Shown one piece after another: positions 11,899 through 56,083 of a stretch of 64,000 nt of DNA. The notes beneath the pieces are model-generated. The model was given only the letters and a program-made list of their open reading frames with translations. It was not told the DNA's origin and made no database searches. Position numbers and translations under genes: made by a program. The first letter of the stretch is position 1. The number at the start of each line of letters is the position of its first letter. The DNA lies in the IMG/VR virus record IMGVR_UViG_3300046703_000335, positions 146,409 to 210,408 of that record; one strand, 5' to 3'.

Positions 11899-14316
11899 TT
11901 ATCCCTGTATTCCAGTAGAACCCATTATCGCAAAAAGTTTTTTCAGAGTCACAGTACTACTTATACCCGTAGCCCCTATAATAGCACTTGAAAAAGCACT
12001 TAAATTCGAAATAGTATCATCACCAGATCCTGAGTTAGTAAATCTCAGTACCCAATTTGTAAATGATCCTGAAACAAAATTATTAGTATAAGAACCATGA
12101 ACATATTTACCATCAATAGATATTACAAATTTATTACCATTAAATATAAATCGGACTTTAAGATCTGAAAATATCTCATCAGGTGTATGCGGATCAGATA
12201 TACTATAATTTATCTCATATGTATTTATGCCTGTCACATACCCATAAGTTATAACTGATAAAGATCTGTTTATCTTTATGTATGCACTATTATCATTATT
12301 ATTTATTTTTACCATTAAGTTATCTGATTTCACAGTAACAAATAGTTTTATATCTACATCTGTATTAAAACTAAATCCCCCCATTATATTCGAAGGGGAT
12401 GTCAATGTTAGATTATTCATATCATAACTATAAGTTCCTACCCCTGTCCAAGACCCATCTCTAGCATTACTATAAAAAATACCACTCAGACCGATTTCAT
12501 TAAATCTTTCTATACCTATAAGATTTATGCCTGTTACACCATGAAAAGAAGGGTAGTAACCTGGCTCCACAAGGATATATGGACTGCCATTCTGGAGTGC
12601 TCTATCAATAGTTCGGTAGGGGGATTCAAAAGTCCCAGTCCATAAATCATTACCATCCGGAGATGCATATATTAACCCTGTCTCAAAAGAAGGATGTGAT
12701 GGATATATAATGACCACATCATTTCTTGTCCTATTACCTATAATCAAATTGCTATCACTCAGAGTCATTTCTTTACTTCTAAACCTACTATAACTTGATC
12801 CAGTAGTATAAAAAGTATAAAGACCTGTTTCTCCATTTTGTGATGGGACAACATTTGTAGCTATATGTAAATCATTGACACCTGATCTCTGATACCCTCT
12901 ATCTGGAGTAGCATAAGGACCCGTTTCAGTACCCGGATAATCCTTATCGTACCCATATTCAGCGACATAATTTCCCAAAGCTGTTTCATTATAATTAAAC
13001 TCAAAAGCCCCTATATCTCCTGTAACACCCTGTATCCCTGTGGCACCTCTATGGAATAAGTCAAAATCTATATCACGATCAAATGGAGATACATTATCTC
13101 TGATACCTGTATAAGATGCAGTATAGTACCATCCCCCATCAATATTAACTTTCTTTACCCCTATCTCTCCATAGATATTATTCCACCTATCAAAATCTCC
13201 TCTATCGATATTTGGGGAAGAAAGCTGCAGTCTAAAATCCTCATTAAAAGGATCTCTATACATAGCAGTCTCACCGATATTATTCATACCAGTACTCCCA
13301 GTAGGAACAGATCCCCCCCACCATACGAGCACATCATCGAAATTATTATTTAAAATCTTTACAGGAGTATTGAAATAAACTCCAGTAGATATCGGAGTAC
13401 CTGCACTCGATATGCTATTAGAATCTACTCTACTATTCTCATCCCCGATATTACTAAGACTTATAGCCATACCAGGATCAATATCCCCTGCTTCTGAATA
13501 CATTACCCTAACTATATCACCTATAGCAAGTTCTTGTGATAGTTGAAGACCACTCCATGAAACTATAGATCCTAAAGATATAACTGTAAAATCCGTACCA
13601 TAATTAAATGATGGTCCATTTACGATATTTACAGCAACGTCATATTCTCCATTATTTGTCGGTGAAGCAAAACCTGGGAGTTGTATTCTATTATGGCTGA
13701 TATCAAAAGCATTAATAGTCTTATATATTACTCTAAGATTGGTATCAGGAAACAAAATCGGGGGTAAATCTAAAGCCCCATAAATAGTATTTCCCCACAG
13801 ATCTAATCTATCAACAGTAACTATGTCTATAGATTTTCGACCATTAGAAAAAACATTAGAATTTACACAGATTTCTTTTGCAGAATTAATTTTTATAGCT
13901 GATTGATGCTCATAGAAATAATTTCTATTAATTGAAATGTAATTTACGGAGTCTATATTTATTGCAATATCTACACTATTAAATCTACACCCACGAACTA
14001 TTGTTGAACCGACACTTAGATTATTTGCAGTTATTCCTGTGGAAATATTTTTAAATGTTAATCCTTCAATAAGACCCTGCATGTTTAATAGAGTTAAACT
14101 TCCCACTACTGGTGTAGCACCATATGCAGATTTAATTGTCAAATTTTTAGTAACAGTAAGATTTCCATAAGATACCCCATTACCGCTCTGAAGGACAATA
14201 ACACCACCCTCATATACTTGTGTCAAAGCATAAGGAAGTGTCTTCACCGGAGAAAGAAGTTCTCCGGTGTTTGTATCCAAGCCATATAAAGAATCAACGT
14301 ATACGGTATAAAGCAT
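11899..14316 (-). CDS. Right-handed beta-helix (pectin-lyase-like) virion protein
   Basis: Three YV/YA...G.D...G....P..T...A motifs (DUF1565-like), Asn/Ile ladder repeats, DFRLQLSSPNIDRG..DIGAFEF. Confidence 0.65.
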   Translation of the reverse strand: MLYTVYVDSLYGLDTNTGELLSPVKTLPYALTQVYEGGVIVLQSGNGVSYGNLTVTKNLTIKSAYGATPVVGSLTLLNMQGLIEGLTFKNISTGITANNLSVGSTIVRGCRFNSVDIAINIDSVNYISINRNYFYEHQSAIKINSAKEICVNSNVFSNGRKSIDIVTVDRLDLWGNTIYGALDLPPILFPDTNLRVIYKTINAFDISHNRIQLPGFASPTNNGEYDVAVNIVNGPSFNYGTDFTVISLGSIVSWSGLQLSQELAIGDIVRVMYSEAGDIDPGMAISLSNIGDENSRVDSNSISSAGTPISTGVYFNTPVKILNNNFDDVLVWWGGSVPTGSTGMNNIGETAMYRDPFNEDFRLQLSSPNIDRGDFDRWNNIYGEIGVKKVNIDGGWYYTASYTGIRDNVSPFDRDIDFDLFHRGATGIQGVTGDIGAFEFNYNETALGNYVAEYGYDKDYPGTETGPYATPDRGYQRSGVNDLHIATNVVPSQNGETGLYTFYTTGSSYSRFRSKEMTLSDSNLIIGNRTRNDVVIIYPSHPSFETGLIYASPDGNDLWTGTFESPYRTIDRALQNGSPYILVEPGYYPSFHGVTGINLIGIERFNEIGLSGIFYSNARDGSWTGVGTYSYDMNNLTLTSPSNIMGGFSFNTDVDIKLFVTVKSDNLMVKINNNDNSAYIKINRSLSVITYGYVTGINTYEINYSISDPHTPDEIFSDLKVRFIFNGNKFVISIDGKYVHGSYTNNFVSGSFTNWVLRFTNSGSGDDTISNLSAFSSAIIGATGISSTVTLKKLFAIMGSTGIQG

Positions 14317-14334
14317 AACTATTCATTTCTATTA

Positions 14335-14667
14335 TTAATTTGTGTATAGCCAGCTTGGTTTGGAAGATATGCTAAAAGTACCCCCGCCACCACCTCTCAC
14401 AGTTGTAACCGGTTTACTCTCTGCTGAGCCATCCGCAAGATTCACTCCTGAACTGTTATCTACTCTGTCTCCAAGAGGATTACCAAACTTTGTGTCAGGA
14501 GACACACCACCACCAGTAGAATTACTTATAGGAATGTTTTGAAACAATTCCGGAGGTATGACACCACCACTTAGTACTTCTCCATCATTAGAGGAATAGG
14601 AAGCAAAATTCCCATTAATAATTACAATATTCTTATCTGTATAATTCTGCACTATTACTTTGTTCAT
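14335..14667 (-). CDS. Hypothetical Gly/Ser-rich protein
   Basis: 110-aa ORF with GGGG-type RBS in the minus-strand operon. Confidence 0.5.
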   Translation of the reverse strand: MNKVIVQNYTDKNIVIINGNFASYSSNDGEVLSGGVIPPELFQNIPISNSTGGGVSPDTKFGNPLGDRVDNSSGVNLADGSAESKPVTTVRGGGGGTFSISSKPSWLYTN

Positions 14668-14718
14668 ACTAATACCCCTTTATGTGTTTATACAACTACC
14701 TGTATTAATCAACTTAAT

Positions 14719-15243
14719 TTAAAAATTTGGTATAACTAAACTTGGATCATTCATATCTCTCTGTATCTGCCAATAGGTAGGATCTAAACCAGTTATTATA
14801 TTTGATAATTTTTTTAGCTCTTCTAAATTTTCTTTAAAAGCTACAGACATAATTACCGTCTCACATCTACCCTTAACTGCATTAAATAGCTTAATGGCGC
14901 TATCGTAAACTCCCTCACCACGATATGCATCATGATATTCTTTAGTACCATCAAAGCTAATTCCTATCCTATCAACATGGTCAGCTATCTCTGGTCTATA
15001 AAAAGTTCCATTAGTAGTAACTCCTACTTTAAACCCTTTACTTTTTAGTATATCACAAATATCCGCTAAATTTGATATAGTAAAAGGTTCACCACCAGTA
15101 ATGTACACCCATTCTATTTCACCAGCTTTTGATAATATTGTTTCCAAACTTTTATCAATATCTATTATTGCGGTACTCTTTGCACAACATCCGGCGCATG
15201 ATAAATTACAAGCATACGTAATTGGGAAAAGTATATGATTCAT
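14719..15243 (-). CDS. Minimal radical SAM protein
   Basis: CNLSCAGC (CxxxCxxC), ITGGEPF, VTTNGT, ISFDG..HDAYRG; 174 aa, no SPASM domain. Confidence 0.85.
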   Translation of the reverse strand: MNHILFPITYACNLSCAGCCAKSTAIIDIDKSLETILSKAGEIEWVYITGGEPFTISNLADICDILKSKGFKVGVTTNGTFYRPEIADHVDRIGISFDGTKEYHDAYRGEGVYDSAIKLFNAVKGRCETVIMSVAFKENLEELKKLSNIITGLDPTYWQIQRDMNDPSLVIPNF

Positions 15244-15816
15244 TTATACAGTCTCTATTGGTTGTTCGATCATTTTAAGCTCGTTAATCCATTTTTGATG
15301 TAAGACCAATCCTGTAGAATATCGCCATTTATACATCGTAACAGCTTGCCAGTCTCGATAAAGATATGGAACCCATACATTACCCCCACCAAGTCGATGA
15401 TGTCTTGACCAGGCTACCGAATAAGGTAACCCTACATCATCAATACCATCCTCAGAAGGGCACTCTATACCATCAATGTAATATCGCATCTCACCATCAC
15501 CAAGACATACATAGGTAAGTAAATGCCATTTCTTATCATCTAATGATATACCTGTATACTGTTCAATAGGTTTAGATTCAGAATTAGAAAATTGTAATTT
15601 ATAATCGTAGTCACCAGATCTTTTTATTTCCATTAGTATTGCCTGATCTGACAGTACTAAACCTCCCGAATCTGATACAGTCAACAAATACACAGGGTAT
15701 TCATCCGGGATCTGTATATCATAAATCCACCCCATACAAGTAAACTTATTAGCCTTCTTAATACTGGTGGGTTCTACAGTTACATATTTACTTTTTATGA
15801 GTGAGACTTCTGGCAT
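15244..15816 (-). CDS. LamG/concanavalin-A-like domain protein
   Basis: FTCMGWIY...DDKKWHLLTYV...MRYYIDG. Confidence 0.6.
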   Translation of the reverse strand: MPEVSLIKSKYVTVEPTSIKKANKFTCMGWIYDIQIPDEYPVYLLTVSDSGGLVLSDQAILMEIKRSGDYDYKLQFSNSESKPIEQYTGISLDDKKWHLLTYVCLGDGEMRYYIDGIECPSEDGIDDVGLPYSVAWSRHHRLGGGNVWVPYLYRDWQAVTMYKWRYSTGLVLHQKWINELKMIEQPIETV

Positions 15817-15842
15817 ACTAATCCTTGAATTTATATATCGAT

Positions 15843-16145
15843 TTAATAGTTATATACTGCTCTCAGGTATAAGATACCTGTTACACCATGAGAAGTGTTA
15901 TTCATTACATCTTTTATATCCGAATTAGCAAGATTCAAAGCCAACATAGCTGTAGTACCCGGAACATTACTAAATGTAACTCCAAAATCGATACCATACC
16001 GCTGGGCAGGTCCATCAGTAGGATCTACAGCAATATCATAGGCACCATTGGGTCCAGTTGTCGGTGCTGCCCTTAACAGTATTAAGTCATTAGATAGAGG
16101 ACTTACCATACCTGTCAAACCAAAATATTCAACTTCTATAGCCAT
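15843..16145 (-). CDS. Small virion protein with G-x-T-G motifs
   Basis: 100 aa; GPAQRYGIDFGV resembles GPSFNYGTDFTV in the beta-helix protein. Confidence 0.55.
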   Translation of the reverse strand: MAIEVEYFGLTGMVSPLSNDLILLRAAPTTGPNGAYDIAVDPTDGPAQRYGIDFGVTFSNVPGTTAMLALNLANSDIKDVMNNTSHGVTGILYLRAVYNY

Positions 16146-16216: not shown

Positions 16217-16225
16217 GAAAAAGTC

Positions 16226-16286: not shown

Positions 16287-18422
16287 ATGACAGCAGCACA
16301 AAAAGGTATTACTTTGCTTTTATGGTCTGAACAAGAAGATACACTACTCAAGGAGCTATATTTAAAAACACCTAAAGATATAATATTAACTAAGTTAAAC
16401 AGAACTTGGAAATCTATAAGATATAGGGCTAGTAGACTAAAGTTTAAACGAGACCCATCCATTATAAAACAGGATAATATAGAAGGTACTAAAAAAGCTA
16501 TGCTTGAAAAATATGGTGTAGAATACTCTACCCTTCTACCGGCTATGAAAGAAAAAAGTAGACAAACCAATTTGAAAAAAAGGGGAGTAGAGTATCCTTC
16601 ACAATCCAAAGAAGTTCGTGACAAGATAAAATTAGTAGTAAATGAGAGATATGGTGTAGATAATGTATTTCAGGCACAGAAAATAAAAGAAAAATCTGAA
16701 CAAACTATTTTAAAAAGATATGGAGTAAGATATATAAACCAAAGTCCAACTATTCGAGAGAAAACAAAAGAAACAAATCTTGAAAGATATGGAATATCAA
16801 ATACTTTTCAATTAACAGATAGGGTCGAAAAAGGAATGATTGAAAAGTATGGACAAAGAGTCCCACTTAATGTCCCTGAAATTGCTGAAAAAAAGAAAAA
16901 AACGAGTTTAGAAAAATATGGTGTTGAAGTAGCTTCAAAAAATGAAGCTGTAAAAAGAAAATTATCAGAAACTTTAAAAACTGCTGTCGTTAGAGAAAAA
17001 AAATATCAAGCATTAAAGAAAAAAGGCTCTTTTAATTATTCTAATGAAGAGCTTGCATTCGCTAATTATTTATTAATAGCTGATCCAGACCTTAAAACTC
17101 ATCAGCTTCATCCTATAACAAAACATGTGATAGATTACTATATGCCCAGATATGACTTATGGGTACAATATGACGGAACTTATTGGCACGGTAAGGGAGA
17201 AGCAGTGCATACTGGACCTCAAGCCATATCCATAGAGAAGATAAAAGCAAAAGATATCTATCAGAACGAAAATATTCCAAATTTAATAAGATTCTGGTCA
17301 GATGATGTTAATGAAGCTATAAAAAAAGGCAGCATATTTACTCTTATTGAAATAAAAATAAAAGAAAAGATAAATACTACTGAGGATATATTTGTGTGCC
17401 ACCAGTATCGAAAAAAAATAGAACATTATACTGAAGACCGAGACAATTTACCATTTAACCCAGATAATATCAAAGCATCAAATTTTACGCTTATAAAGGA
17501 GGAACTATCAACAGAGATCGTAGAGTTTATAAAAAAATATGAATGGTTAGAAACTGTTGGAGTTAATCCTAAATGGTGTTTCACAGCTCGATACAATGAT
17601 AAACTTGGAGGAGTAGTCCTAATAAATGAACCTACTGCTTATTCAAAAATGCTGGGTAAAGATACCCCCATCTATGAAGCCCTTATACAAAGAGGTGCTA
17701 CAGCTTCCTGGACCCCTAAAAACCTCGGAAGCAGACTTGTTATGTTCTCTTGTAAGTGGATGGTAGCTAATACCCCAAAACGAATCTTTGTAGGTTATGC
17801 TGATCCTTCTGCTAAAGAACGCGGCATTATCTATCAAGCATGTAATTTTGATTATTTAGGGGATAATTTTGGGAATAGCTACCTATACAAGCACCCTGAA
17901 ATAAATCGAACATTTACATCCCAATATCTAAAAAGAACATCAACATTTAGACGCTGGTGTCTTCTTAATAAAATTGAACTGAGAAAAGAATGGTTTAAAG
18001 AAAATGGGTTTAAGAATTTGGAGATTATACCTCATGAAATTAAAAATATGTGGTATCTCTGGATAAAAGATATAATAAGCAGTGCAGAAAGAATAACTAT
18101 AAGTAAAAAGATGAAATATGCTATTCTACTCTATAGAGATAAAAAAGACAGAAAAATACTTGAACCTTTAAAAAAATATGACAAATTTCCATACAATAAA
18201 ATTTATAACACAACAAACCAGCTAACTCTCCGACCACGCGGAAAAAACAATCATGGCTTAACAGCAGATAGAAAAAATCCAGAAAAAATTGAATTTATAT
18301 TAAAAAATCATAGCACTATGTCCAGGTCAGTTATGGCCCTAGAGTTGAATGAAACTCAACGATGGGTAAAAAGACAAGTAAATAAATTAGTATCTGAGAA
18401 TAAGATTAAGCCAAAGAGATAA
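16287..18422 (+). CDS. Fusion: KYGV-repeat DNA-binding region + PD-(D/E)XK (Vsr/DUF559-like) endonuclease + Mom-like GNAT DNA-modification domain + C-terminal HTH
   Basis: Repeats (E/K)(K/R)YGV...; IDYYMPRYDLWVQYDGTYWHG; FIKKYEWL..RGATASWTPKNLGSRLV..GYADPSAKERGIIYQACNFDYLG; opposite strand to neighbours. Confidence 0.7.
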   Translation: MTAAQKGITLLLWSEQEDTLLKELYLKTPKDIILTKLNRTWKSIRYRASRLKFKRDPSIIKQDNIEGTKKAMLEKYGVEYSTLLPAMKEKSRQTNLKKRGVEYPSQSKEVRDKIKLVVNERYGVDNVFQAQKIKEKSEQTILKRYGVRYINQSPTIREKTKETNLERYGISNTFQLTDRVEKGMIEKYGQRVPLNVPEIAEKKKKTSLEKYGVEVASKNEAVKRKLSETLKTAVVREKKYQALKKKGSFNYSNEELAFANYLLIADPDLKTHQLHPITKHVIDYYMPRYDLWVQYDGTYWHGKGEAVHTGPQAISIEKIKAKDIYQNENIPNLIRFWSDDVNEAIKKGSIFTLIEIKIKEKINTTEDIFVCHQYRKKIEHYTEDRDNLPFNPDNIKASNFTLIKEELSTEIVEFIKKYEWLETVGVNPKWCFTARYNDKLGGVVLINEPTAYSKMLGKDTPIYEALIQRGATASWTPKNLGSRLVMFSCKWMVANTPKRIFVGYADPSAKERGIIYQACNFDYLGDNFGNSYLYKHPEINRTFTSQYLKRTSTFRRWCLLNKIELRKEWFKENGFKNLEIIPHEIKNMWYLWIKDIISSAERITISKKMKYAILLYRDKKDRKILEPLKKYDKFPYNKIYNTTNQLTLRPRGKNNHGLTADRKNPEKIEFILKNHSTMSRSVMALELNETQRWVKRQVNKLVSENKIKPKR

Positions 18423-20573: not shown

Positions 20574-20774
20574 TTAAAATCCATGTTTGCTGTTAGTAAA
20601 ATTAGCATCATTTATTCCCGTATAACCCATATCCCACATTACAGGCTCAAGTGTCCCCATACCTGTTATGCCACCGGTTTCAGGGGTCACTTTATCAATG
20701 TTATAAAATACATTGATTTCATATGGTCCTATAGCAGGGGATATAGTCATCATTTTACCTTGATATACATCCAT
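20574..20774 (-). CDS. Small virion protein with G-x-T-G motifs
   Basis: 66 aa, tightly packed in the operon; GITG, GYTG. Confidence 0.5.
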   Translation of the reverse strand: MDVYQGKMMTISPAIGPYEINVFYNIDKVTPETGGITGMGTLEPVMWDMGYTGINDANFTNSKHGF

Positions 20775-21183: not shown

Positions 21184-21609
21184 TTAAGCATTACCGTAAT
21201 AATACCCAGTTGAACCAGCTGCACCAGTTGAATACTTATCATTAGCCAGAAGATCCATGTAAGTATTGGTGAATCTGGAAGTACCTGTATCACCGATATC
21301 TTGACGAGGGACTTCATCAGCTGAAGTGTATGCACCTTCAGTAAGAACAAATGGTGCACCATTATGGTCTGTGAAGAGTGAGTTACTTGCTGCTGTCGAG
21401 AAATACTTCAGGACACCCTTTGCAAGACTATACAGAACGTTATCTGTAAGTTGAATAACTTTTGTTTCTCCCCACACGATATATTCATCTTGACCGCTGA
21501 GGTAATTACCTTCCTGGGCACCGCCAAGCTGACTTCTTTTGTCAAAATCAGTAAAATAAATTTTACCTACGTTTGTGCCAAAATATTGTACACGTAGTGT
21601 ATCAGCCAT
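21184..21609 (-). CDS. Probable virion structural protein, monocistronic
   Basis: 141 aa, AGGAGG RBS, own promoter motif and terminator; GDTG and GSTG motifs. Confidence 0.6.
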   Translation of the reverse strand: MADTLRVQYFGTNVGKIYFTDFDKRSQLGGAQEGNYLSGQDEYIVWGETKVIQLTDNVLYSLAKGVLKYFSTAASNSLFTDHNGAPFVLTEGAYTSADEVPRQDIGDTGTSRFTNTYMDLLANDKYSTGAAGSTGYYYGNA

Positions 21610-21766: not shown

Positions 21767-24700
21767 TTATTTTATGCCAAATTCCTTAAGCCATCCATCA
21801 GCTATTTTTCCCCAATTATACTCCTTCATCTTAGCATAAGCCCTATCAGCCCACATAAGCCTATAAGACTCATCAGAAAGCATCCTTATAGCTTCTGCTA
21901 CGAATCTATTAACATATGAAGTGGGATATTCACCATTGCGACTTAATCCATCAGGAGAAAGAAGTATCCCTGCTGATCCTACAGTAGTTTGCAAACCGGC
22001 GAAGTCAGTACTTACAATAGAACACTTAGATAATCCTGCAGCAACTGCTGTTATACAAAATGTTTCACTGAACCAGCTCGGATACAACCAAATCTTTGAT
22101 TCTTTCTCATATTCAGCCAATTGCTTCTTACTCACTCGATCAACATACTTTACACCAGGCTGATTCATTAGATTTTTTATATCTGCTATAAATTTCAGTC
22201 CCTCGACATCCTTCCGCATACGAGCCATGGATTCCCAATTAAAAAAGCCATAAGCTACGACAAGTTCAAAATCAGGGATCTCTTTTCTTATTTGAGGAAC
22301 CATCTTTAAAAGCTGGTATAAACCTCTATCGGGGCTTGAAGAATAAACAGCTTGATTCTTCTTTTTATATTTGTCAACATCGCTATATAGACTGAAATCC
22401 TGACCATTTGCAGTAAGGAACATCTTATCACTTATAATACCATGGTGACTCATAATAAATTCTTTATGCCACTCTGACAAATAAGCGTACTTATCTACAC
22501 GCCAAGTCATAATATCATAACTTTTATCTGGGGATAACCAAATATCATGAAATATGATATAGTTTCTTAAAGAATGAATATTTAATTTTAATGGTTCCGT
22601 CGATCGTGACGCTATGAAATAATCAATAACATCATATTCTACATCAGCCTGCATCTTAGTATGATCACGATAAACAACATCCCCAACCTTTTCTCCGACA
22701 TTATCAAAGACCGGATCAAGAACGATATCATCTTTACTGTCTGATAGTAAATCATTATAAATAGTGGTCTCAAAACCTTTTTTTACAAATTCCCGAGCAA
22801 GATATGATGCCCAAGTTTCTGATCCTGCCATACCCTCATCTACTTTTTGTTTATTCCAAGGCTCCCAAGCTGGACCTGTCCAAATTACTACTCGGGGTTT
22901 ATTCCATTTTGCCCTATATTTCATATGATTTTCAGCATCTTCTTTATTATAAGATTCTCTATTCTCTTCCTGGTAGGCACCTCGGCTTATTCCGCCATAA
23001 TGAAAAACAAAAGAATCTATAGCTTGACCTGTCACATATCCAAATTTTGATAATCGATTCATAAGGTCAAGATCTTCGCACCCATTAAGGAAGAGAGGAT
23101 CAAATAAGCTTACTTCATTTATTGCACAGCGAGCAAAAATAGTAGCGTATGCTGCCACCCATCCCTGACGGACAAAAACATCCTTATGCTTTTTGTTAGA
23201 ATACTCCATGAATTTATAGAGTTCTTCCACATAAGGTTTAATCTCATCAATTTTCATAGCTGGGTGAAGATCAATCTTTGATTTTTCTAAGAGCATCGAA
23301 TAAGATGGTTTACCTGGAGCGTCATGCAACCAGCCTCTGTCACAATTAGACAATACCCCACAAGAAGCTAATCGATCAACAGTCTCCATTTTATTTACAA
23401 GGCTAGTAAGCCAGCACTTTGACACTATAACATCTGAATTCAAAATTACAAAATATTTTGTATTAGAAGCTTTAATACCTGCGTTACAAGTCTCAGAAAA
23501 AGATAAGCGCTTATTTGGGTCACCTATAACAGTAATTCCTTTTAATGTCAGCAAGTAATCCCATGTCTCTTTATTACTACCTCCATCTGAGATAATGATG
23601 TGGAAAGGGTATAGGGTATTCATGAGAATAGAGCTTACACACATCTTAAGATATTCAACGTTATTATAGTTAGCAATAATGATATCTACTATGGATCTAT
23701 TTTTTACATCTATCTTTTCGGGAGGATCCGGAAATTTCATCTGATTATTAATAAGCTCTGTTAAAGTGCTAATCCACTGACTAGCAATAACTGGTAGACT
23801 ATACTCTCCTATAGAAGCTTTTCCAGCTTCTCCTATCTTCTTTCTCACGGTACTATCTTTCAACTTTATGAGAGCATTTTTCCACTCTTCTTTAGTATCA
23901 CATATAAAACCGTTTTCTCCATCCTTGATAATTTCTTTGTATGCCTGAAGTGGAGAACAAAGAACTGGGAGACCAAGAGCCATTGCTACAGTAGCTTTCA
24001 CAGAACTCTTTGCTGGTTGAACCTCAACACGTTGAGGGCACAATACCACATCACAGGCATTCATTACATCGACCCAGCCTTCCTCTGTCCAGCGATGAGT
24101 AGCATTATCCCATTCTGTACATAATACTATTTCATAACCTGCTTCTTCAATTGTATCTTTTAGATATTCATTTACAAGCCAGGAATTTCCACCCATACCC
24201 ACATAAACTGCCTTAGGCTTTAGATATCGATTTTCATATACTGCTTTATCAGATGTTTTCTCCACTGCATCCTTAAGGACTACTGTCTTCATAAAACCAT
24301 GTTCATTAGTAATCTCTTTAAGCTTGGTAGAACAGCAGGTGATAAGATCAACCTCTTCCATACATTCCCGTTCAAACGGAAAATTGAATAAAGCCTCACA
24401 ATGATCAAAGACACATTTTATATCTGAGGATTTAAGATGCTTCATTATTTCAAGATCTTCTTTACCAAACTGAGTAAAAATAGCTACAGTTGCATCTCCT
24501 ACCTTGTTTCTTGTTTCATAGATATTATTACCGTAGTAATTAGAAATGATTGTGCTATCAATACCCATATCTACCAGTTGCTGGCAGATATTAAACCTTC
24601 TTAATCGGATAGAAGGATTCGTTAGATCAAGTGTGGGAATAAACCACACTATTTTAATATCGCGAATTTTATTCAATCTTATGTCACAAAAATCGAGGTT

Positions 24701-25888
24701 ATTCCGGAGAACACTCATATTAAGATCATTTTTCTGCAAAAATTCTTTTAATTTAGAAATGTCTTCTTCCTGGAGCACCATTCCTTTTGACAAACGATTC
24801 ATTTCGATATTCGTAATCTTAAGAAGTTCGCTCATCTGTTCATTACCGGGTTTATGCGTAAGAGCAAGTGTACAATATTTTACTACACTGTCATATTCTT
24901 TTCTGTTGTAATAAATAAGAGCCAGTTTAGCTGCTGGAATAAATCCATAATAGTCAATTATCTGAGACATTCCTCCTTCAAGCTTTTTATTAAGAGCTTC
25001 TTTATAATATGATACTGCGGTGTCTGTATCATTCTCTTGCTCAAAGATATTTCCAAGAACCACGTAATTCTCAGCATAAATGCTATTGAATCTAATACCT
25101 TTTAGTGCATAATTTTTTGATGAGGAATAATCAGATTTTTCAAAATAGTATCTTGATAATTTTATACATGCTGTAGTAAGATTATCCGCAAAATCAGCCC
25201 CCTTTTTTATATACGGATCAAGTACCGATATTGCTTTTTCCCACATTCCAAAATCAGCCAGTTCTTTACCATAATAAAATTTTATTCGCTCTGAACAATC
25301 TCCCGTTTCATATACTTTTTTGAGAGCCTCTATATTGCGAGCGGGATTATGTACTCTAACCCTATAATGATCAATATTGATATTTTCCCGATGTAATCTA
25401 TTGGGGGGGACATCCAAATTCATATACTCGTGTATGGGGTCATGCCATTTTATATGCTCACAATTTTTTACTATTCTTTCTCTAGGGAGAATTAGTACTG
25501 GAGCATCCTTCTCATCATGGCTATATACGTAGTTAAGAATTATAATATCCCAAGCACTTATCTTTGGCTTCAATACCTGCAGTCTCATATACTCTGAAGG
25601 CCTCAAAACATCGTCAGAGTCTAACCACATGATATATTGAGATGTATTATTACTAAAAGAGAAGTTTCTCGCAGCTGAGAAATCAGAAATCCATTTAAAG
25701 AAAAATGTCTTAGCACCATAACTTTCAGCTAAAGACTTTATCTCTGGGTCCTCTTTTTCCATAGCAAGAGTTATTACTATCTCGTCAAATAGTTCACCTT
25801 GACAACTTTTAAGACATCTATCTAAAACATCCTTATCATCAGGACCTACAATAATATTCAAACCCAATAAAGGGGTGCGTATACTCAT
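21767..25888 (-). CDS. Multidomain glycosyltransferase: GT2 + TPR + GT4-like + GT2 + GT4-like
   Basis: DFSAARNFSF..WLDSDD..IHEY (GT2 of SunS/flagellin-GT type); TPR helices; GT-B domain with AMALGLPVLCS..GENGFI; second GT2 IIIANYN..LNSDV..GCEDLD; last GT-B SSPDRGL..YPSWFSETFCIT. Confidence 0.85.
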   Translation of the reverse strand: MSIRTPLLGLNIIVGPDDKDVLDRCLKSCQGELFDEIVITLAMEKEDPEIKSLAESYGAKTFFFKWISDFSAARNFSFSNNTSQYIMWLDSDDVLRPSEYMRLQVLKPKISAWDIIILNYVYSHDEKDAPVLILPRERIVKNCEHIKWHDPIHEYMNLDVPPNRLHRENINIDHYRVRVHNPARNIEALKKVYETGDCSERIKFYYGKELADFGMWEKAISVLDPYIKKGADFADNLTTACIKLSRYYFEKSDYSSSKNYALKGIRFNSIYAENYVVLGNIFEQENDTDTAVSYYKEALNKKLEGGMSQIIDYYGFIPAAKLALIYYNRKEYDSVVKYCTLALTHKPGNEQMSELLKITNIEMNRLSKGMVLQEEDISKLKEFLQKNDLNMSVLRNNLDFCDIRLNKIRDIKIVWFIPTLDLTNPSIRLRRFNICQQLVDMGIDSTIISNYYGNNIYETRNKVGDATVAIFTQFGKEDLEIMKHLKSSDIKCVFDHCEALFNFPFERECMEEVDLITCCSTKLKEITNEHGFMKTVVLKDAVEKTSDKAVYENRYLKPKAVYVGMGGNSWLVNEYLKDTIEEAGYEIVLCTEWDNATHRWTEEGWVDVMNACDVVLCPQRVEVQPAKSSVKATVAMALGLPVLCSPLQAYKEIIKDGENGFICDTKEEWKNALIKLKDSTVRKKIGEAGKASIGEYSLPVIASQWISTLTELINNQMKFPDPPEKIDVKNRSIVDIIIANYNNVEYLKMCVSSILMNTLYPFHIIISDGGSNKETWDYLLTLKGITVIGDPNKRLSFSETCNAGIKASNTKYFVILNSDVIVSKCWLTSLVNKMETVDRLASCGVLSNCDRGWLHDAPGKPSYSMLLEKSKIDLHPAMKIDEIKPYVEELYKFMEYSNKKHKDVFVRQGWVAAYATIFARCAINEVSLFDPLFLNGCEDLDLMNRLSKFGYVTGQAIDSFVFHYGGISRGAYQEENRESYNKEDAENHMKYRAKWNKPRVVIWTGPAWEPWNKQKVDEGMAGSETWASYLAREFVKKGFETTIYNDLLSDSKDDIVLDPVFDNVGEKVGDVVYRDHTKMQADVEYDVIDYFIASRSTEPLKLNIHSLRNYIIFHDIWLSPDKSYDIMTWRVDKYAYLSEWHKEFIMSHHGIISDKMFLTANGQDFSLYSDVDKYKKKNQAVYSSSPDRGLYQLLKMVPQIRKEIPDFELVVAYGFFNWESMARMRKDVEGLKFIADIKNLMNQPGVKYVDRVSKKQLAEYEKESKIWLYPSWFSETFCITAVAAGLSKCSIVSTDFAGLQTTVGSAGILLSPDGLSRNGEYPTSYVNRFVAEAIRMLSDESYRLMWADRAYAKMKEYNWGKIADGWLKEFGIK

Positions 25889-28518: not shown

Positions 28519-28519
28519 T

Positions 28520-52011: not shown

Positions 52012-52015
52012 CTGT

Positions 52016-55000
52016 TTAAGATTGATAGTATCCTATGTAAGTTTTACCTACCATGTTTGCCACTTTACCAATACCTTCTGATACGATGCACAGATCAAGA
52101 CTCCACTCTCCACTATAGATCTTTTCAAGATTAGTACCCACATGAATTCTATTCTGTTTAATTAATCTTGGATAAAGTACCATCTTCCAATCAGCAGTCT
52201 CTGCTCCATTATCAGCATTCTGTTTGCCAAAAGTTATAAAATTGAAATCCTTAATAACTCTCTCGTATGGTGTATAAAGTGAAAAAGATTTATAGCCATT
52301 ATTATCCGCAGAAGTAGCATACTGCCACCAATTACTCTTAGGAATATACAACCCAATCGCTTTATCCACTGAATAGATAGATGGAAATGCCGCATTAGTA
52401 TCAATAATATCTGCTTGAACTTTAATGACAAAATTATCATCTCCAAATCTATTACCTTCAGGATACCAGTCGATATTTATTCCACCATCCCGATTACGGA
52501 AATATGGTGAAGTAAAATAATATTTAGTAATTGCACTTGTAGTAGGCACTATTATTGATGGGTCATACTTATAGCCAGACCATTCAATGATTAATGACCC
52601 AAGACTTGCTATAGTTATTCTTTCACACCGTAGCTTCTTATACTTCTGTATAGTAATATCTCCCACTATAATCTCATCAGGAGATGTATCTGTTGAAGCC
52701 TCAATTTCATTATATTGCGTTTCAAGATAACTAGCATTATCAAATGCCCATCTACCCGGGATTCTATCTATAGGAGTATCGTAATACTCTTTCATAGTCA
52801 GCATATAATACTGTTGCGGATCAGTAATAGGTGGATCTAAAGGCAATCCAAGTCCACTACTATTATCCAAATAAATTCTCTTAGTAGATGTAAATTTCTT
52901 TTCACGAAGAATGATCTGATTATTCTGATACTCCTCTCCATTCGAAGAATCGGCTATCCGCCCAATAACGGTAACATTAGGAGGGGTAACAATATCCTGA
53001 TTACCCTCTGGAGCCTCAGCCCCTACAAATCTCAATGCCTTTACCTCAAGAATATCGTTAATCAGTACTCTACCCTGAACCTGCAACCTATAATCAGTAT
53101 TAACATCTGTAATGGGACCAACACCCATATACTGAGTTTTAAGAATGCCGTTAGTAGAAATATTCCCCTTAACTTCAACAGCTACATCTGAATAATTCCC
53201 TCGACCATCAGAAAAATCTACAGTAAATGTCTTTAATTTTTCAGTATCTGTAACATTACGACTATCAATGAGGTGAAGACCAAAAGGATTTGATGTGCTA
53301 CCTGGTGTACCACCAATATTCGCAGATACTTTTGGATCTTTAAGATTTGTGAAGCCTAAAGTCCCCATAATATTACTATTAACATCCGTACCCCTTAAAG
53401 CGATCTCATTCGCCATCCCTGTACCTTTTACATAAAGATTGAGATTAGCATCAGATTGCCTTAATCCTTCATATATTACATCCGCACCATCTCCGAAAGA
53501 AGCTCCTTCTTTGAAGTACCCCTTTTTACCACACCAGATATTATTCTTTACAGTTAGATTCTGGACATTAGCAATATTAAAAATCTGCTCATTTGCATAA
53601 ATCGTCCCGTAAACAAAGATATCATCTCTAAAAATAACATTTGGGGAAAAGGTCACCCGGTTAAGCAGGCCTATTCCATTGAAATAGACATCACCGTTAA
53701 ACAACCACCCATCCGCAGCTTCACCAAGATCGAGCTTAGCAAATTTAATATTGAGGAAATCTCCACCATACCCACCAGAACCAAAATAATGAAATTTGGT
53801 AAATGCGACATCTACAGGAGCAAACAAACCTCGTGTCACTCTAAATAATTCTACTGCCTCGACCTTGATAGGATCAGCACCATTTAAAAGGTCTTTAATA
53901 ATAATGCGACCATGCTGATCACCACTCATACCTGTATACCCAAACGGATCTTCTACAACTTGTACTCCATATGCTATACCGGTTTCTGAAGTCACGGTAC
54001 CATCAGTATTATTATAAATAAAATTGTAAACTCTACTATCAGGCATACCAGTATATCCCTGATTGGGATCTGCCGGGAATCCTATGTTGTTAAGGATATC
54101 ATCTTTAACTTCTTCAATACCCCCCCACCCAGCTTGTGTAAGGGTAACGCTACCTGATACAATGGTACTATTTTCGAGTCTTATTTGATAATCGACCACA
54201 TCACCAGCGATAACAGTCCCTATCGGTTCTGGAAGAAGAAGCAAAGAATAATCGGACAGATATGCTGTACTGATGCCCATACCATAGAGACTCTTAACAT
54301 CACGATCATAACCATTTCCGATATCACCAATGGTAAAAAGACGAGTTCCCTCCGCATCATAAGCCTCATACGCTACCTGACCCCCAGTATAACCATAAGC
54401 AGAGACCCCTGTCTCACCAATAACTGCTATACCGCGTTTAACGAGAACAATAGCTGCAGCATCCACAACATCGGAGGATTGCGGGATTCCTGTAAACCCT
54501 ATTAAAGCAGGCATTTCACGTGAAACTGTCCCAGGGAGTTTCCAGGTTCTACCATACATATCCCGCTCGATATATGCATCTTTCCCTACAAACAAATGAT
54601 CATTTACCTGAGCAGACCCGTTAATTTCAAGAATGGTATTTACACCAGTGGCACCTTGGAAGCCATCATTATATCGATCAGTATTCCAGATAGGATCAGG
54701 TTGTTCCTGTCCCGGTGTTACAGTATTAAGACCTACTCGACCTTCATAGTCAACTGCTACATAATTCTTTATATCACCATCTTGTATAGCTTTGGCGAGA
54801 AGAATCAGTGAACCGGTCTCCCCATCGAAGTTTGTTATAGATACTATATTTTTACCAGTTTCACCTCTATGAATTACACTTAATGTATCCGAATATTCTC
54901 TCATACCTGTGATACCGGTTTCTCCAAACCCAATCATGACCTGTCTAGCAGATATCTGCTGAGCTATAATTTCTCCGGAATTAAGAGCTTCAGGACCTGT

Positions 55001-56083
55001 CTCCAGGGTAATTAATCCTGTATCATTCCCTACCATCAAACCTTGCATGGCGAACATGCCAGTATTACTTAAAACACGAGGAGTCACAGAATTACTATTG
55101 AATGCTTCAGTACCCAGACCTTGGTTTAACCCCGTGGCAAAAGCACCCTCATCTATAATCCCATTGGGGAATTGTGGTGTAAAACCATCAAGATTTTTAT
55201 CAGCAATATTTTCAGTATTATACCCACCATGAGTGATCCGATAAGAAATCTCATCAAGAGAGCACACTCTTTTATTATACAAGCTAAGTAAATCAACTAT
55301 CTGATTATCTTCTATTGTATCAGAAAAAGCAGTACGGTAAATAGCTGCTATTGGTATATTATAAGTATTGTCAGTAGGTTGACCATCGGAGCTTACAGCT
55401 CCGATAAACTCTACATCTCCTTGAGACTCATTGAAAATATCCTTACTTATAGGAGTATTCCAACCTTCAAGGACTCTTATATCTATAACCGCTCTTAATC
55501 GATTAGCTGTCTCTGTTCCTACAATAGGATTTTTAAGATTGCTATCCCGGTAGACATCCTGATCGGTACCCGTAGCTGCAGTAACTTCTGCAAAATGAAG
55601 ACTTACATAAACTATATCTATGCGATCTGTATCGGGCTGATTGATCATTGGGATAGGGGTAAGTGTTTTTGATTTATCTGTTTGAGTATTCAGATCGATA
55701 TTGTCTGAAGGATATGTCTGATCCCTATACTCTATATCTCCTGTCAGAAAAATATAATATCCTTTTGCATACAATACTGCTGGTCGATCGAGACTGACTC
55801 CTCCAGATACCGTAAAATTTTCCTGAGTACCAAATATCATTCCACCTTCTTTTACTTTGAAAGCTTCTGCAGTACTAAAAAATCCGGAAAATTTATTATT
55901 AGGAGATGCTACTTCGCCATAGACATGCTGGATACCCCGGCGTACTTGATCCAGTAAACCAATACCCATGTTACGGACTTCATCATCAAGTAAGGGCTTG
56001 TTTTTCTGAGCCCACAGATAATAGTAACGATTATATTCACCATATACGATCACATCAGAGTAAAATCCGCGTTTTCCTGACAT
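52016..56083 (-). CDS. Large tail-fibre/baseplate-like structural protein
   Basis: N-terminal QKNKPLLDDEVRN and R.DIVYV..H..EV....D...NP.VG.ETANRL typical of fibre/baseplate N-termini; GRVGLNT.TP fibre motif; 10 G-x-T-G motifs; 1355 aa. Confidence 0.6.
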   Translation of the reverse strand: MSGKRGFYSDVIVYGEYNRYYYLWAQKNKPLLDDEVRNMGIGLLDQVRRGIQHVYGEVASPNNKFSGFFSTAEAFKVKEGGMIFGTQENFTVSGGVSLDRPAVLYAKGYYIFLTGDIEYRDQTYPSDNIDLNTQTDKSKTLTPIPMINQPDTDRIDIVYVSLHFAEVTAATGTDQDVYRDSNLKNPIVGTETANRLRAVIDIRVLEGWNTPISKDIFNESQGDVEFIGAVSSDGQPTDNTYNIPIAAIYRTAFSDTIEDNQIVDLLSLYNKRVCSLDEISYRITHGGYNTENIADKNLDGFTPQFPNGIIDEGAFATGLNQGLGTEAFNSNSVTPRVLSNTGMFAMQGLMVGNDTGLITLETGPEALNSGEIIAQQISARQVMIGFGETGITGMREYSDTLSVIHRGETGKNIVSITNFDGETGSLILLAKAIQDGDIKNYVAVDYEGRVGLNTVTPGQEQPDPIWNTDRYNDGFQGATGVNTILEINGSAQVNDHLFVGKDAYIERDMYGRTWKLPGTVSREMPALIGFTGIPQSSDVVDAAAIVLVKRGIAVIGETGVSAYGYTGGQVAYEAYDAEGTRLFTIGDIGNGYDRDVKSLYGMGISTAYLSDYSLLLLPEPIGTVIAGDVVDYQIRLENSTIVSGSVTLTQAGWGGIEEVKDDILNNIGFPADPNQGYTGMPDSRVYNFIYNNTDGTVTSETGIAYGVQVVEDPFGYTGMSGDQHGRIIIKDLLNGADPIKVEAVELFRVTRGLFAPVDVAFTKFHYFGSGGYGGDFLNIKFAKLDLGEAADGWLFNGDVYFNGIGLLNRVTFSPNVIFRDDIFVYGTIYANEQIFNIANVQNLTVKNNIWCGKKGYFKEGASFGDGADVIYEGLRQSDANLNLYVKGTGMANEIALRGTDVNSNIMGTLGFTNLKDPKVSANIGGTPGSTSNPFGLHLIDSRNVTDTEKLKTFTVDFSDGRGNYSDVAVEVKGNISTNGILKTQYMGVGPITDVNTDYRLQVQGRVLINDILEVKALRFVGAEAPEGNQDIVTPPNVTVIGRIADSSNGEEYQNNQIILREKKFTSTKRIYLDNSSGLGLPLDPPITDPQQYYMLTMKEYYDTPIDRIPGRWAFDNASYLETQYNEIEASTDTSPDEIIVGDITIQKYKKLRCERITIASLGSLIIEWSGYKYDPSIIVPTTSAITKYYFTSPYFRNRDGGINIDWYPEGNRFGDDNFVIKVQADIIDTNAAFPSIYSVDKAIGLYIPKSNWWQYATSADNNGYKSFSLYTPYERVIKDFNFITFGKQNADNGAETADWKMVLYPRLIKQNRIHVGTNLEKIYSGEWSLDLCIVSEGIGKVANMVGKTYIGYYQS

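What the first reader, a model, noticed from the sequence alone, without database searches (positions are those of the whole stretch)
11899..56083. Candidate virion O-glycosylation system: a G-x-T-G motif in five structural proteins plus a GT2-TPR four-glycosyltransferase enzyme
Seen: hand count gives G-x-T-G 7 times in the beta-helix protein (11899..14316; GSTG, GATG, GVTG, GETG), 10 times in the central third of the fibre protein (52016..56083; GETG, GITG, GATG, GFTG, GYTG) and twice each in the 100-, 66- and 141-aa proteins (15843, 20574, 21184). That is about 23 in roughly 2470 aa, mostly dispersed rather than collagen-like and usually followed by I/M/V/L. A rough estimate at about 9% G and 8% T gives about 2. 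The same late region encodes a 1373-aa GT2-TPR-GT4-GT2-GT4 protein (21767..25888). Known: GT2-TPR enzymes (SunS type, flagellin and spore BclA glycosyltransferases) glycosylate proteins, BclA glycans lie on G-x-T repeats, and some mycobacteriophage virions are glycosylated by phage GTs. Inference: G-x-T-G is a sequon, GT2-TPR primes the Thr, and the other three GT domains extend the glycan as a single-chain assembly line on exposed virion appendages.
Basis: partly seen in the sequence, partly recalled or inferred. Interest (0 to 1): 0.85.

Follow-up and report, generated by a model that had tools for sequence, protein, structure and literature searches.

The report
Phage virion O-glycosylation with scattered sequons
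A 210-kb jumbo phage carries a four-in-one sugar-adding enzyme, related to the enzymes that glycosylate collagen-like spore-coat and flagellar proteins, together with a short G-x-T-G tag scattered over five late proteins that most likely marks where the sugars go; this is predicted, not measured.

Summary
G-x-T-G occurs 7, 10, 2, 2 and 2 times in the five proteins: 23 observed against 2.2 in shuffles, and 17 of 23 are followed by I/M/V/L. Codons vary, so selection acts on the protein. The motif sits at conserved columns in 66 and 37 homologues and shows loss-and-gain turnover in the small proteins.

The 1373-aa enzyme is GT-A/TPR/GT-B/GT-A/GT-B. Its first module matches GmaR (E 7.5e-29) and SunS (1.3e-20). 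It has the architecture of C. difficile SgtA, which puts GlcNAc on single G-x-T-G peptides.

New evidence comes from relatives of this module. Their neighbouring genes are about 5-fold enriched in G-x-T-G, in 72 viral and 68 bacterial loci. The closest relatives sit beside collagen-like (G-x-T-G-[VIL]-Q)n or BclA-like genes.

Within the clade, phages with a collagen-like gene next to the enzyme lack the scattered motifs in the orthologous proteins. Phages like this one show the reverse.

The sequon reading is therefore the best explanation (about 0.55), but no glycan has been shown. I rejected two rivals. A protease site is unlikely because a separate K-x-A-S motif fits that role. The radical SAM gene is absent from relatives that keep the motif. 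It is a new variant of a known kind.

The parts
21767..25888 (-). 1373-aa fused glycosyltransferase: GT-A(GT2)/TPR/GT-B(GT1-4)/GT-A(GT2)/GT-B(GT4)
   Evidence: Pfam and PHROG hits. 58 full-length homologues share 243 invariant residues spread over all four GT domains.
25181..25888 (-). Residues 1-236: priming GT-A domain with invariant W88-L-D90-S-D92-D93 (DxD) and I152-H-E154
   Evidence: Profile search gives GmaR E 7.5e-29, SunS 1.3e-20 and 7msk 3.5e-19. Single-sequence search gives GmaR 6e-8 and SunS 5e-5. Alignment; invariance.
24809..25180 (-). Residues about 237-360: tetratricopeptide repeats, presumed substrate-binding arm
   Evidence: TPR_1/2/7/8 hits. Matches consensus TPR and OGT TPR chains.
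23759..24691 (-). Residues about 400-710: first GT-B (Glycos_transf_1 / Glyco_trans_1_4) domain
22949..23701 (-). Residues about 730-980: second GT-A (GT2) domain
   Evidence: PF00535 at 736-861 and phrog_3692. Matches chondroitin synthase and GalT1. Conserved S818-D819 and E938-D939-x-D941.
21770..22861 (-). Residues about 1010-1373: second GT-B (GT4) domain
   Evidence: Glyco_transf_4 at 1022-1164 and phrog_2170 at 1062-1368.
11899..14316 (-). 805-aa protein: N-terminal right-handed beta-helix, a low-confidence linker, and a C-terminal ConA-like lectin/glucanase jelly roll. It has seven G-x-T-G at residues 340, 424, 430, 495, 593, 781 and 799.
   Evidence: Counts. AF2 pLDDT 80 with all seven motifs in coil and three in segments below pLDDT 50. 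Foldseek matches GH16/CBM66/legume lectins. Motif columns are conserved in 37 homologues.
15843..16145 (-). 100-aa protein with GLTGM (residue 9) and GVTGI (residue 87)
   Evidence: Orthologues keep 2-3 motifs while their positions shift.
20574..20774 (-). 66-aa protein with GITGM (residue 35) and GYTGI (residue 50)
   Evidence: Positional counterparts in L020, L021, L176 and L178 hold 2-3 motifs.
21184..21609 (-). 141-aa protein with GDTG (residue 106) and GSTG (residue 132) in its C-terminal tail
   Evidence: Orthologues lose GDTG and gain extra C-terminal copies.
52016..56083 (-). 1355-aa conserved protein between terminase and portal, possibly a fibre; ten G-x-T-G
   Evidence: 66 homologues at 35-94% identity carry 6-14 motifs each, except P0043 with one. 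Only weak fibre-like leads.
53930..54925 (-). Residues 387-718 of the 1355-aa protein: the motif zone
   Evidence: G/T/G occupy 60-67 of 67 sequences at six columns. AF2 pLDDT is below 50 over 311-603 despite this conservation.

Best explanation
The late region encodes a protein O-glycosylation system for virion-associated proteins. The N-terminal GT-A+TPR module of the 1373-aa enzyme is an SgtA/GmaR/SunS-type protein glycosyltransferase. Its TPR arm binds short exposed segments of the form (hydrophobic/H/R)-G-x-T-G-(I/M/V/L), and the GT-A domain transfers a first sugar to the Thr (sometimes Ser) hydroxyl, most likely a HexNAc by analogy with SgtA and GmaR. The three further GT domains on the same chain (GT-B, GT-A, GT-B) then most likely add further sugars.

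The motif is one unit of the collagen-like hexad G-x-T-G-[VIL]-Q. In related phages that hexad forms long fibre proteins encoded beside the same enzyme. In this phage lineage the unit has been spread as single copies over loops and flexible segments of at least five late proteins.

What is shown: the enrichment, conservation and turnover of the motif; the enzyme's family relationship; and its gene-neighbourhood link with G-x-T-G proteins. What is inferred: that these particular threonines are glycosylated, the identity of the sugar, the role of the three downstream GT domains, and that the proteins are on the virion surface.
For: 1. Enrichment: 23 observed against 2.2 expected, p 3e-16. The following residue is I/M/V/L in 17 of 23, p 6e-7. 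Codons vary.

2. Conservation: motif Thr identity is 0.66 against 0.42 for other Thr in the 1355 family (p 0.003), and 0.76 against 0.54 in the 805 family (p 0.014). Ser is the main substitute.

3. Linear-motif behaviour: positions shift while copy number is kept in the 100-aa and 141-aa families, and there are lineage-specific gains in the 1355 family. All seven motifs of the 805-aa model are in coil, and the 1355 motif zone is low-confidence.

4. Enzyme family: GmaR E 7.5e-29, SunS 1.3e-20, invariant DxD, TPR directly after the GT-A domain.

5. Gene neighbourhood, viral: over 72 loci with relatives of the module, G.TG is 1207 observed against 223 expected (5.4x), while six control patterns are 0.85-1.5x. 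Six of the 7 closest non-lineage relatives (30-42% identity; 3 of 4 lineages) sit beside (G-x-T-G-[VIL]-Q)n proteins carrying up to 386 motifs (Fisher p 1e-5 raw, 0.003 after collapsing lineages).

6. Gene neighbourhood, bacterial: 510 observed against 101 expected. Twelve of the 21 closest homologues (354-367 aa, Clostridia/Bacilli) have a BclA-like (G-x-T)n gene immediately adjacent (Fisher p 4e-5).

7. Biochemical precedent: SgtA (358 aa, GT-A + 4 TPR, gene next to bclA3) adds beta-O-GlcNAc to Thr or Ser in 12-17-aa peptides. These include single-site DGATGLIGPDGAGADGA and DGAVGLIGPTGAGADGA (PMC7157674).

8. Complementarity inside the clade: eight loci like the window have the enzyme, no collagen-like gene, and 6-11/2-3/2-3 motifs in the 805/100/141 orthologues. 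Five loci in three lineages have collagen-like gene, 196-aa gene, 202-aa gene, then the enzyme, and their orthologues carry 0-1/0/1 motifs. So the motif is not required by these folds.

9. About 62 related loci without the enzyme show no dispersed enrichment.

Against: - No direct evidence of glycosylation exists, and the phage is uncultured.
- The association within the clade amounts to one or a few evolutionary events, so it is not statistically independent.
- P0043 replaced the motif Thr by Glu/Asp at most columns although its contig carries GT2-TPR-GT2, GT1, RmlA and RmlC genes.
- In the 258-kb relative and in L169, the 805 orthologue lost its motifs while the 100-aa orthologue kept them. 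No enzyme gene was seen at the syntenic site of the 258-kb contig.
- In the window itself there is no collagen-like gene, so the enzyme's true substrate could lie in the unseen 146 kb of the genome.
- Gly-rich turns with Thr/Ser/Asp are also ordinary structural elements.
- A direct alignment with SgtA could not be made.
- Virion location of the five proteins is not shown.
Confidence: 0.55

Rival explanations
1. The motif is a structural element with no modification: a tight Gly-x-Thr-Gly turn, or a relic of collagen-like fibre segments. The glycosyltransferase acts on something else, such as a collagen-like protein encoded outside the window, host envelope glycans or DNA.
For: - The two glycines are the most conserved positions, 0.80-0.89.
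- Thr is replaced by Ser/Asp/Glu, as at ST/Asx turns.
- The 1355 motif zone is conserved yet unfoldable as a monomer, as in intertwined trimeric fibres.
- P0043 keeps the glycines but not the threonines while a GT2-TPR gene is present.
- Related phages have true collagen-like proteins that would be sufficient substrates.
Against: - Orthologues of the 805-, 100- and 141-aa proteins in group-B phages lack the motifs, so the folds do not need them.
- Motif positions turn over while copy number is kept.
- The same 5-residue pattern recurs in at least five proteins with no detectable homology to each other.
- There is a strong preference for I/M/V/L after the motif, as in the collagen-like hexad beside the enzyme in other phages.
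- No collagen-like gene lies within 64 kb.
Confidence: 0.27
2. G-x-T-G is the cleavage site of the head-maturation protease (41137-43989), and the five proteins are processed head components.
For: Some motifs lie near protein termini: residues 9 and 87 of 100, 799 of 805, and 911 of 950 in the protease itself. Jumbo phages process many head proteins at short motifs (general knowledge).
Against: - The major capsid protein pieces, the scaffold-like 335-aa protein and the portal have no G-x-T-G.
- A different motif, K-x-A-S, is the top enriched pattern in the window (39 observed against 6.9 expected). It is concentrated in the scaffold-like protein (8), the protease C-terminus (3) and the 634-aa protein (8), and it is conserved in their homologues. 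This fits a protease site far better.
- The 805-aa beta-helix/lectin protein lies in the neck-tail module.
Confidence: 0.03
3. The motif is the target of the radical SAM enzyme (14719-15243) encoded between the 100-aa and 805-aa genes, in a RiPP-like modification.
For: The gene lies among motif-bearing genes. Its best family matches are SPASM-type peptide maturases: StsB, MftC and AlbA.
Against: The gene is absent at this position from L019-L022, L176, L180 and L184, which keep all the motifs; it is seen only in the window and its 93%-identical relative. It is only 174 aa, has no SPASM domain, and scores far below every curated cut-off.
Confidence: 0.02
4. The enrichment is a chance or compositional artefact.
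For: The proteins are somewhat rich in Gly and Thr (10-14% G, 8-11% T).
Against: Composition-preserving shuffles give 2.2 against 23 observed, with a maximum of 9 in 20,000. The motifs sit at conserved columns across families down to 35% identity. The control patterns GxSG, GxAG, AxTG, GxTA and GTxG are not enriched in related loci.
Confidence: 0.01

Closest known systems
SgtA-BclA3 of Clostridioides difficile (exosporium collagen-like glycoprotein and its O-GlcNAc transferase)
   Same: Both have a GT-A domain followed directly by TPRs. The acceptor is Thr (Ser tolerated) in G-x-T-G, the enzyme gene lies beside the substrate gene, and single G-x-T-G peptides suffice in vitro (PMC7157674). Bacterial relatives of the window module of the same size (354-367 aa) sit beside BclA-like genes.
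   Different: Here the module is fused to three more GT domains (1373 aa) and is encoded by a jumbo phage. The presumed acceptors are single dispersed units in non-collagen proteins, not a long triple-helix region. A direct alignment with SgtA was not possible with the tools.
GmaR of Listeria monocytogenes (flagellin O-GlcNAc transferase and MogR anti-repressor)
   Same: It is the best solved-structure relative of the first GT-A domain (E 7.5e-29). It is a GT-A plus TPR-type protein that glycosylates Ser/Thr of a surface filament protein (PMC9638930 and general knowledge).
   Different: GmaR has a second, regulatory function and no fused extender GT domains. Flagellin sites have no reported G-x-T-G consensus (own knowledge).
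SunS/ThuS glycocin S/O-glycosyltransferases
   Same: They show GT-A domain similarity (E 1e-20 and 3.5e-19). They act on a residue in a Gly-flanked loop of a peptide (own knowledge).
   Different: They modify Cys/Ser of small bacteriocin precursors. They have no collagen-like partner and no multi-GT fusion.
BclA of Bacillus anthracis/cereus (GPT collagen-like exosporium glycoprotein)
   Same: Thr sits in the Y position of G-x-T triplets carrying O-linked oligosaccharides (own knowledge; cited in PMC7157674). Relatives of the window enzyme neighbour (GPT)n/(GAT)n proteins.
   Different: BclA needs long uninterrupted triplet runs. The window proteins have at most four triplets.
Mycobacteriophage virion glycosylation (Freeman et al. 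2023, as summarised in PMC12619734)
   Same: Phage-encoded GTs decorate virion proteins. The GT genes lie in the structural module.
   Different: There the glycans sit on C-terminal extensions of capsid and tail-tube subunits. Here the capsid and the tube candidate lack the motif, the enzyme family and sequon differ, and nothing has been measured.

Membership tests
SgtA/GmaR/SunS-type GT-A+TPR protein glycosyltransferases | N-terminal GT-A (GT2) catalytic domain with a DxD metal/nucleotide-sugar motif | tested here: met
   PF00535 on residues 20-99. W88-L-D90-S-D92-D93 is invariant in 4 distant and 58 full-length homologues.
SgtA/GmaR/SunS-type GT-A+TPR protein glycosyltransferases | Significant sequence similarity to experimentally characterised members | tested here: met
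   GmaR 22ao_A E 7.5e-29, SunS 7msp_A 1.3e-20 and 7msk_A 3.5e-19 with profile A5. Single-sequence search gives 6e-8 and 5e-5.
SgtA/GmaR/SunS-type GT-A+TPR protein glycosyltransferases | TPR repeats immediately C-terminal to the GT-A domain | tested here: met
   TPR_1/2/7/8 at residues 272-349.
SgtA/GmaR/SunS-type GT-A+TPR protein glycosyltransferases | Gene adjacent to the gene of its protein substrate (as sgtA-bclA3) | tested here: inconclusive
   This holds for relatives: 12 of 21 closest bacterial and 6 of 7 closest viral homologues (3 of 4 lineages). In the window, the nearest motif-bearing gene (141 aa) starts 158 bp downstream, but there is no collagen-like gene in 64 kb.
SgtA/GmaR/SunS-type GT-A+TPR protein glycosyltransferases | Direct homology to C. 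difficile SgtA itself | not tested
   No tool returned the SgtA sequence. Only architecture, size and context are compared (PMC7157674).
SgtA/GmaR/SunS-type GT-A+TPR protein glycosyltransferases | Transfers a sugar to Ser/Thr (or Cys) of a protein | not testable with these tools
   Needs an enzyme assay or glycoproteomics.
Bacterial/phage collagen-like (BclA-type) glycoproteins | Long uninterrupted (G-x-y)n region able to form a triple helix | tested here: not met
   The longest run in the five proteins is four triplets. The window proteins are therefore not members, although relatives L165 (180 motifs) and L036 (386 motifs) are.
Bacterial/phage collagen-like (BclA-type) glycoproteins | Thr in the Y position preceding Gly | tested here: met
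   All 23 instances are G-x-T-G. Two sites in the 805 family read G-[AS]-T-G-I-Q-G, identical to the hexad of the collagen-like relatives.
Head-maturation protease substrates | Motif present in the major capsid protein, scaffold and protease itself, clustered in propeptides | tested here: not met
   There are zero G-x-T-G in the capsid pieces, the 335-aa scaffold-like protein and the portal. K-x-A-S fills that pattern instead.
Mycobacteriophage-type virion glycosylation | Glycans on C-terminal extensions of capsid and tail-tube subunits, with GT genes next to the capsid gene | tested here: not met
   The capsid pieces (37243-37860, 38695-39141) and the 320-aa protein next to the sheath have no motif. 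The enzyme lies 11 kb from the capsid gene.

The most novel reading that the evidence does not exclude
A jumbo-phage clade has reduced a collagen-like glycoprotein repeat to a portable five-residue O-glycosylation sequon, G-x-T-G-(I/M/V/L). It has sown this sequon over loops of several unrelated virion proteins. A single-chain, four-domain glycosyltransferase reads it and builds a defined oligosaccharide. This would be the first defined sequon for phage virion glycosylation, a natural case of a sequon moving between a dedicated substrate and the rest of the virion, and a compact tool for site-directed O-glycosylation.
Probability: 0.4. Interest if true: 0.8.

Novelty: new variant of a known kind. 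Interest (0 to 1): 0.62.

Why it matters
Virion glycosylation by phage-encoded enzymes has so far been shown experimentally only for some mycobacteriophages, to my knowledge (not established by the literature search), and no acceptor consensus is known for any phage. This locus offers three things.

First, it gives a concrete, testable sequon and a candidate enzyme.

Second, it links huge phages of uncultured hosts to the well-studied spore and flagellar O-GlcNAc systems of Firmicutes.

Third, it shows two states within one clade, a dedicated collagen-like substrate versus scattered single units. That contrast could explain how glycan coats spread over virus particles.

A short sequon read by one polypeptide that both primes and extends would also be of practical use in glyco-engineering. 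If the threonines are not glycosylated, the locus is still useful. It shows that this GT2-TPR family is a reliable genomic marker of G-x-T collagen-like proteins in phages.

Tried and rejected
- Megablast of 25 kb, and tblastn of the 1355-aa and 805-aa proteins, against GenBank phages found nothing. Only the sheath finds distant jumbo phages.
- Rfam gave no hits in the window, so no intron model explains the split capsid gene.
- AF2 of residues 1-1200 of the 1355-aa protein gave pLDDT 58, and Foldseek found nothing below E 0.1. The ESM Atlas gave only weak tail-fibre-like leads.
Only secondary structure and pLDDT were used.
- The protease-site idea was rejected.
- The radical SAM idea was rejected.
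- A DNA-level repeat was rejected.
- The podovirus MW202524, which carries a distant homologue of the enzyme, has three GxTG[IV] in a repeat protein beside its GT cluster. This is not significant by composition (3 against 1.6) and was set aside.
- Co-occurrence look-ups for motif-poor 805 homologues (P0098, P0099, P0102) and for P0043 were uninformative, because the contigs end or the flanks do not reach the enzyme's position.
- I first took the 807-aa protein of L030 for an orthologue of the 805-aa protein. BLAST shows it is not.
- Literature searches found no description of this phage system. Freeman et al. 2023 is not held.

Full report
**What the window is.** The 64-kb window is part of IMG/VR contig IMGVR_UViG_3300046703_000335, 210,408 bp. 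It is a jumbo myovirus with nearly all genes on the minus strand and about 35% G+C. No close relative is in GenBank. The sheath finds only distant huge phages: an uncultured 485-kb phage, Tunturiibacter phage Tunturi_5 and Bacillus phage G.

In transcription order the map reads as follows:
- Terminase with an intein (56112-59360).
- The 1355-aa protein (52016-56083).
- Portal with an intein (46404-49829).
- Prohead protease with an intein (41137-43989).
- A scaffold-like 335-aa protein (40032-41039).
- A split major capsid gene (38695-39141 and 37243-37860, with a LAGLIDADG gene between).
- The 1373-aa glycosyltransferase (21767-25888).
- The 141-aa, 66-aa and 100-aa proteins.
- A LamG-domain protein and a radical SAM gene.
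- The 805-aa protein (11899-14316).
- Several conserved unknowns, including an actin-family gene.
- The tail sheath (1191-4124).

This map rests.

**The observation.** Seventeen of the 23 are followed by I, M, V or L, against a background of 24% (p 6e-7).

Codons for both glycines and the threonine vary freely, so this is selection on the peptide and not a DNA repeat. An unbiased scan of all gapped three-residue patterns puts G.TG third in the window. So the signal survives the look-elsewhere objection. The motifs are dispersed, and the longest G-x-y run is four triplets.

**Conservation.** The 1355-aa protein has 66 homologues of 35-94% identity and nearly constant length. They carry 6-14 motifs each, in the same central zone. 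At six columns the G, T and G are each present in 60-67 of 67 sequences, and Ser is the main replacement for Thr.

The 805-aa protein has 37 homologues with the same behaviour. Motif threonines are more conserved than other threonines: 0.66 against 0.42 (p 0.003), and 0.76 against 0.54 (p 0.014).

In the small proteins the motif shows turnover. A copy is lost at one place and a new one appears nearby, while the number per protein stays at 2-3. That is how short linear motifs behave, not structural turns.

**Structure.**
- The 805-aa model has pLDDT 80. It shows an N-terminal right-handed beta-helix, a low-confidence linker at 395-467, and a C-terminal ConA-like lectin/glucanase jelly roll.
- All seven motifs fall in coil, and three lie in segments below pLDDT 50.
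- The model of residues 1-1200 of the 1355-aa protein is poor, at pLDDT 58. The strongly conserved motif zone (311-603) is below 50. This fits either an intertwined oligomeric fibre or a flexible region.
- No fold match was found for it. Language-model neighbours are tail-fibre families, but only at lead level.
- 'Fibre' and 'structural' therefore remain inferences from gene position.

**The enzyme.**
- Pfam and PHROGs confirm the order GT2, TPR, GT1/GT4, GT2, GT4.
- With a four-sequence profile, the first GT-A domain matches GmaR, the Listeria flagellin O-GlcNAc transferase, at E 7.5e-29. It matches SunS at 1.3e-20 and a SunS-like enzyme at 3.5e-19.
- The DxD motif is invariant.
- Fifty-eight full-length homologues share 243 invariant residues spread over all four GT domains. 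All four are therefore under purifying selection.
- C. difficile SgtA has the same GT-A plus TPR layout in 358 aa, and its gene lies beside bclA3.
- SgtA adds beta-O-GlcNAc to Thr or Ser in peptides of 12-17 residues. These include peptides with one G-A-T-G-L or G-P-T-G site (PMC7157674).

**The new comparative evidence.** I scanned IMG/VR with the GT-A+TPR profile and obtained 72 loci. Over all their ORFs, G.TG is 1207 observed against 223 expected, while GxSG, GxAG, AxTG, GxTA and GTxG are at 1.0-1.5 times expectation.

The excess comes from proteins beside the enzyme gene that are built of the hexad G-x-T-G-[VIL]-Q:
- 45 motifs in L030.
- 85 in L031 and L032.
- 124 to 386 in L033, L035 and L036, where the four GT domains are split into two adjacent genes.
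- (GPT)n or (GAT)n proteins in L040, L056, L083 and L096.

Six of the seven closest relatives outside the window's lineage have such a neighbour, against four of sixty distant ones. Fisher p is 1e-5, or 0.003 after collapsing related contigs.

The same scan of one genome per bacterial species gave 68 loci, mostly Clostridia, Bacillus, Brevibacillus and Paenibacillus. There G.TG is 510 against 101 expected. Twelve of the 21 closest homologues (354-367 aa) have a BclA-like gene immediately adjacent.

The window's motif, especially G-A-T-G-I-Q-G-V-T-G and the C-terminal G-S-T-G-I-Q-G of the 805-aa protein, is one unit of that hexad.

**Inside the clade.** A scan with the conserved 298-aa neighbour protein returned 80 loci. 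They fall into three sets.
- Eight loci of the window type have the enzyme and no collagen-like gene. They carry 6-11, 2-3 and 2-3 motifs in the orthologues of the 805-, 100- and 141-aa proteins.
- Five loci in three lineages have the order collagen-like gene, 196-aa gene, 202-aa gene, enzyme. Their orthologues of the same three proteins carry 0-1, 0 and 1 motifs.
- About 62 more distant loci without the enzyme show no dispersed enrichment, and only two have a collagen-like gene.

The 258-kb relative has a 1546-aa (G-E-T-G-V-Q)n protein with 180 motifs in the same module.

These contrasts show that the folds do not need the motif, and that dispersed units and a dedicated repeat protein tend to replace each other. 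However, they represent few independent events.

**What speaks against.**
- P0043, a 41%-identical 1355 homologue, has Glu or Asp in place of Thr at most motif columns. Yet its contig carries GT2-TPR-GT2, GT1, RmlA and RmlC genes. That enzyme is only 29% identical to the window's module.
- Some relatives lost the motifs in the 805 orthologue but not in the 100-aa orthologue.
- No enzyme gene was seen at the syntenic site of the 258-kb contig.
- Nothing shows that any sugar is attached.

**Rivals.**
- A protease-site reading fails. Capsid, scaffold and portal lack the motif. A different motif, K-x-A-S, is the most enriched pattern in the window. It clusters in the scaffold-like protein, the protease C-terminus and the 634-aa protein, and is conserved in their homologues.
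- The radical SAM gene is absent from relatives that keep every motif.
- A purely structural reading is weakened by the turnover and by the motif-free orthologues, but it is not excluded. I give it about a quarter.

**Verdict.** It remains a prediction.

It is a new variant of a known kind. The SgtA-BclA type of collagen-repeat O-glycosylation appears here in a jumbo phage, fused into a four-GT chain, and apparently acting on dispersed single-unit sequons.

Noticed in passing
40032-41039, 41137-43989 (C-terminal 115 residues), 60132-62036: K-x-A-S is the most enriched three-residue pattern in the window: 39 observed against 6.9 expected, p 4e-17. There are 8 copies in the scaffold-like 335-aa protein, 3 in the tail of the prohead protease and 8 in a 634-aa protein. 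It is conserved in homologues at 42-86% identity. It looks like the head-maturation protease cleavage motif (K-x-A|S, compare the herpesvirus assemblin A|S site).
   Followed up: partly
7759-8769: A 336-aa protein matches the Volactin actin family over its full length (PF25216, E 1.4e-61). It is among the most conserved genes of the module in relatives (60-90% identity). An actin homologue lying between the neck and sheath genes of a jumbo phage is unexpected.
   Followed up: partly
14719-15243 and 15244-15816: A 174-aa radical SAM core follows in frame, after a single TAA, a 190-aa LamG/ConA-like protein. Its best matches are SPASM-type peptide maturases, but it has no SPASM domain. The radical SAM gene is present only in the window and its 93%-identical relative, so it looks like a recent insertion.
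   Followed up: partly
37243-39141: The major capsid gene is split. The C-terminal part is at 37243-37860 (phrog_2522) and a possible N-terminal part at 38695-39141, with a LAGLIDADG endonuclease gene at 38121-38621 between them. No Rfam intron model matches.
   Followed up: no
56112-59360, 46404-49829, 41137-43989, 34476-37058, 6278-7636, 16287-18422(+): The window is unusually dense in selfish elements. There are inteins with LAGLIDADG domains in terminase, portal and prohead protease, a LAGLIDADG/HNH/methylase-like 860-aa ORF, an HNH endonuclease, and a plus-strand homing-endonuclease-like protein fused to a Mom-like DNA-modification domain.
   Followed up: partly
25885-26061: A 58-aa ribbon-helix-helix (CopG) protein overlaps the start of the glycosyltransferase gene by 4 bases and is conserved in L019. 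It may regulate the enzyme gene. Its single GFTGL is probably chance.
   Followed up: no
L004:10001-13978 (P0043): One 1355-family member has Glu/Asp instead of Thr at most motif columns while keeping the glycines (GFEG, GEEG, GEED). The next genes on its contig are GT1, RmlC, RmlA and GT2-TPR-GT2.
   Followed up: partly
L036:1-8444; L165:147-4787: These are giant phage collagen-like proteins made almost only of G-x-T-G-[VI]-Q. One has at least 2814 aa with 386 motifs on a 356-kb contig. The other has 1546 aa with 180 motifs on a 258-kb relative of this phage.
   Followed up: partly
28520-29794: A 424-aa protein contains a lysine/alanine/proline repeat, (KKAP[VA])n, around residues 265-295 that resembles histone H1 or extensin tails.
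   Followed up: no
14335-14667: A 110-aa Gly/Ser-rich protein carries a conserved core, GNPLGDRVDN...SKPSWLY. In relatives L021 and L022 its homologue sits directly after the glycosyltransferase gene instead of before the 805-aa gene.
   Followed up: no
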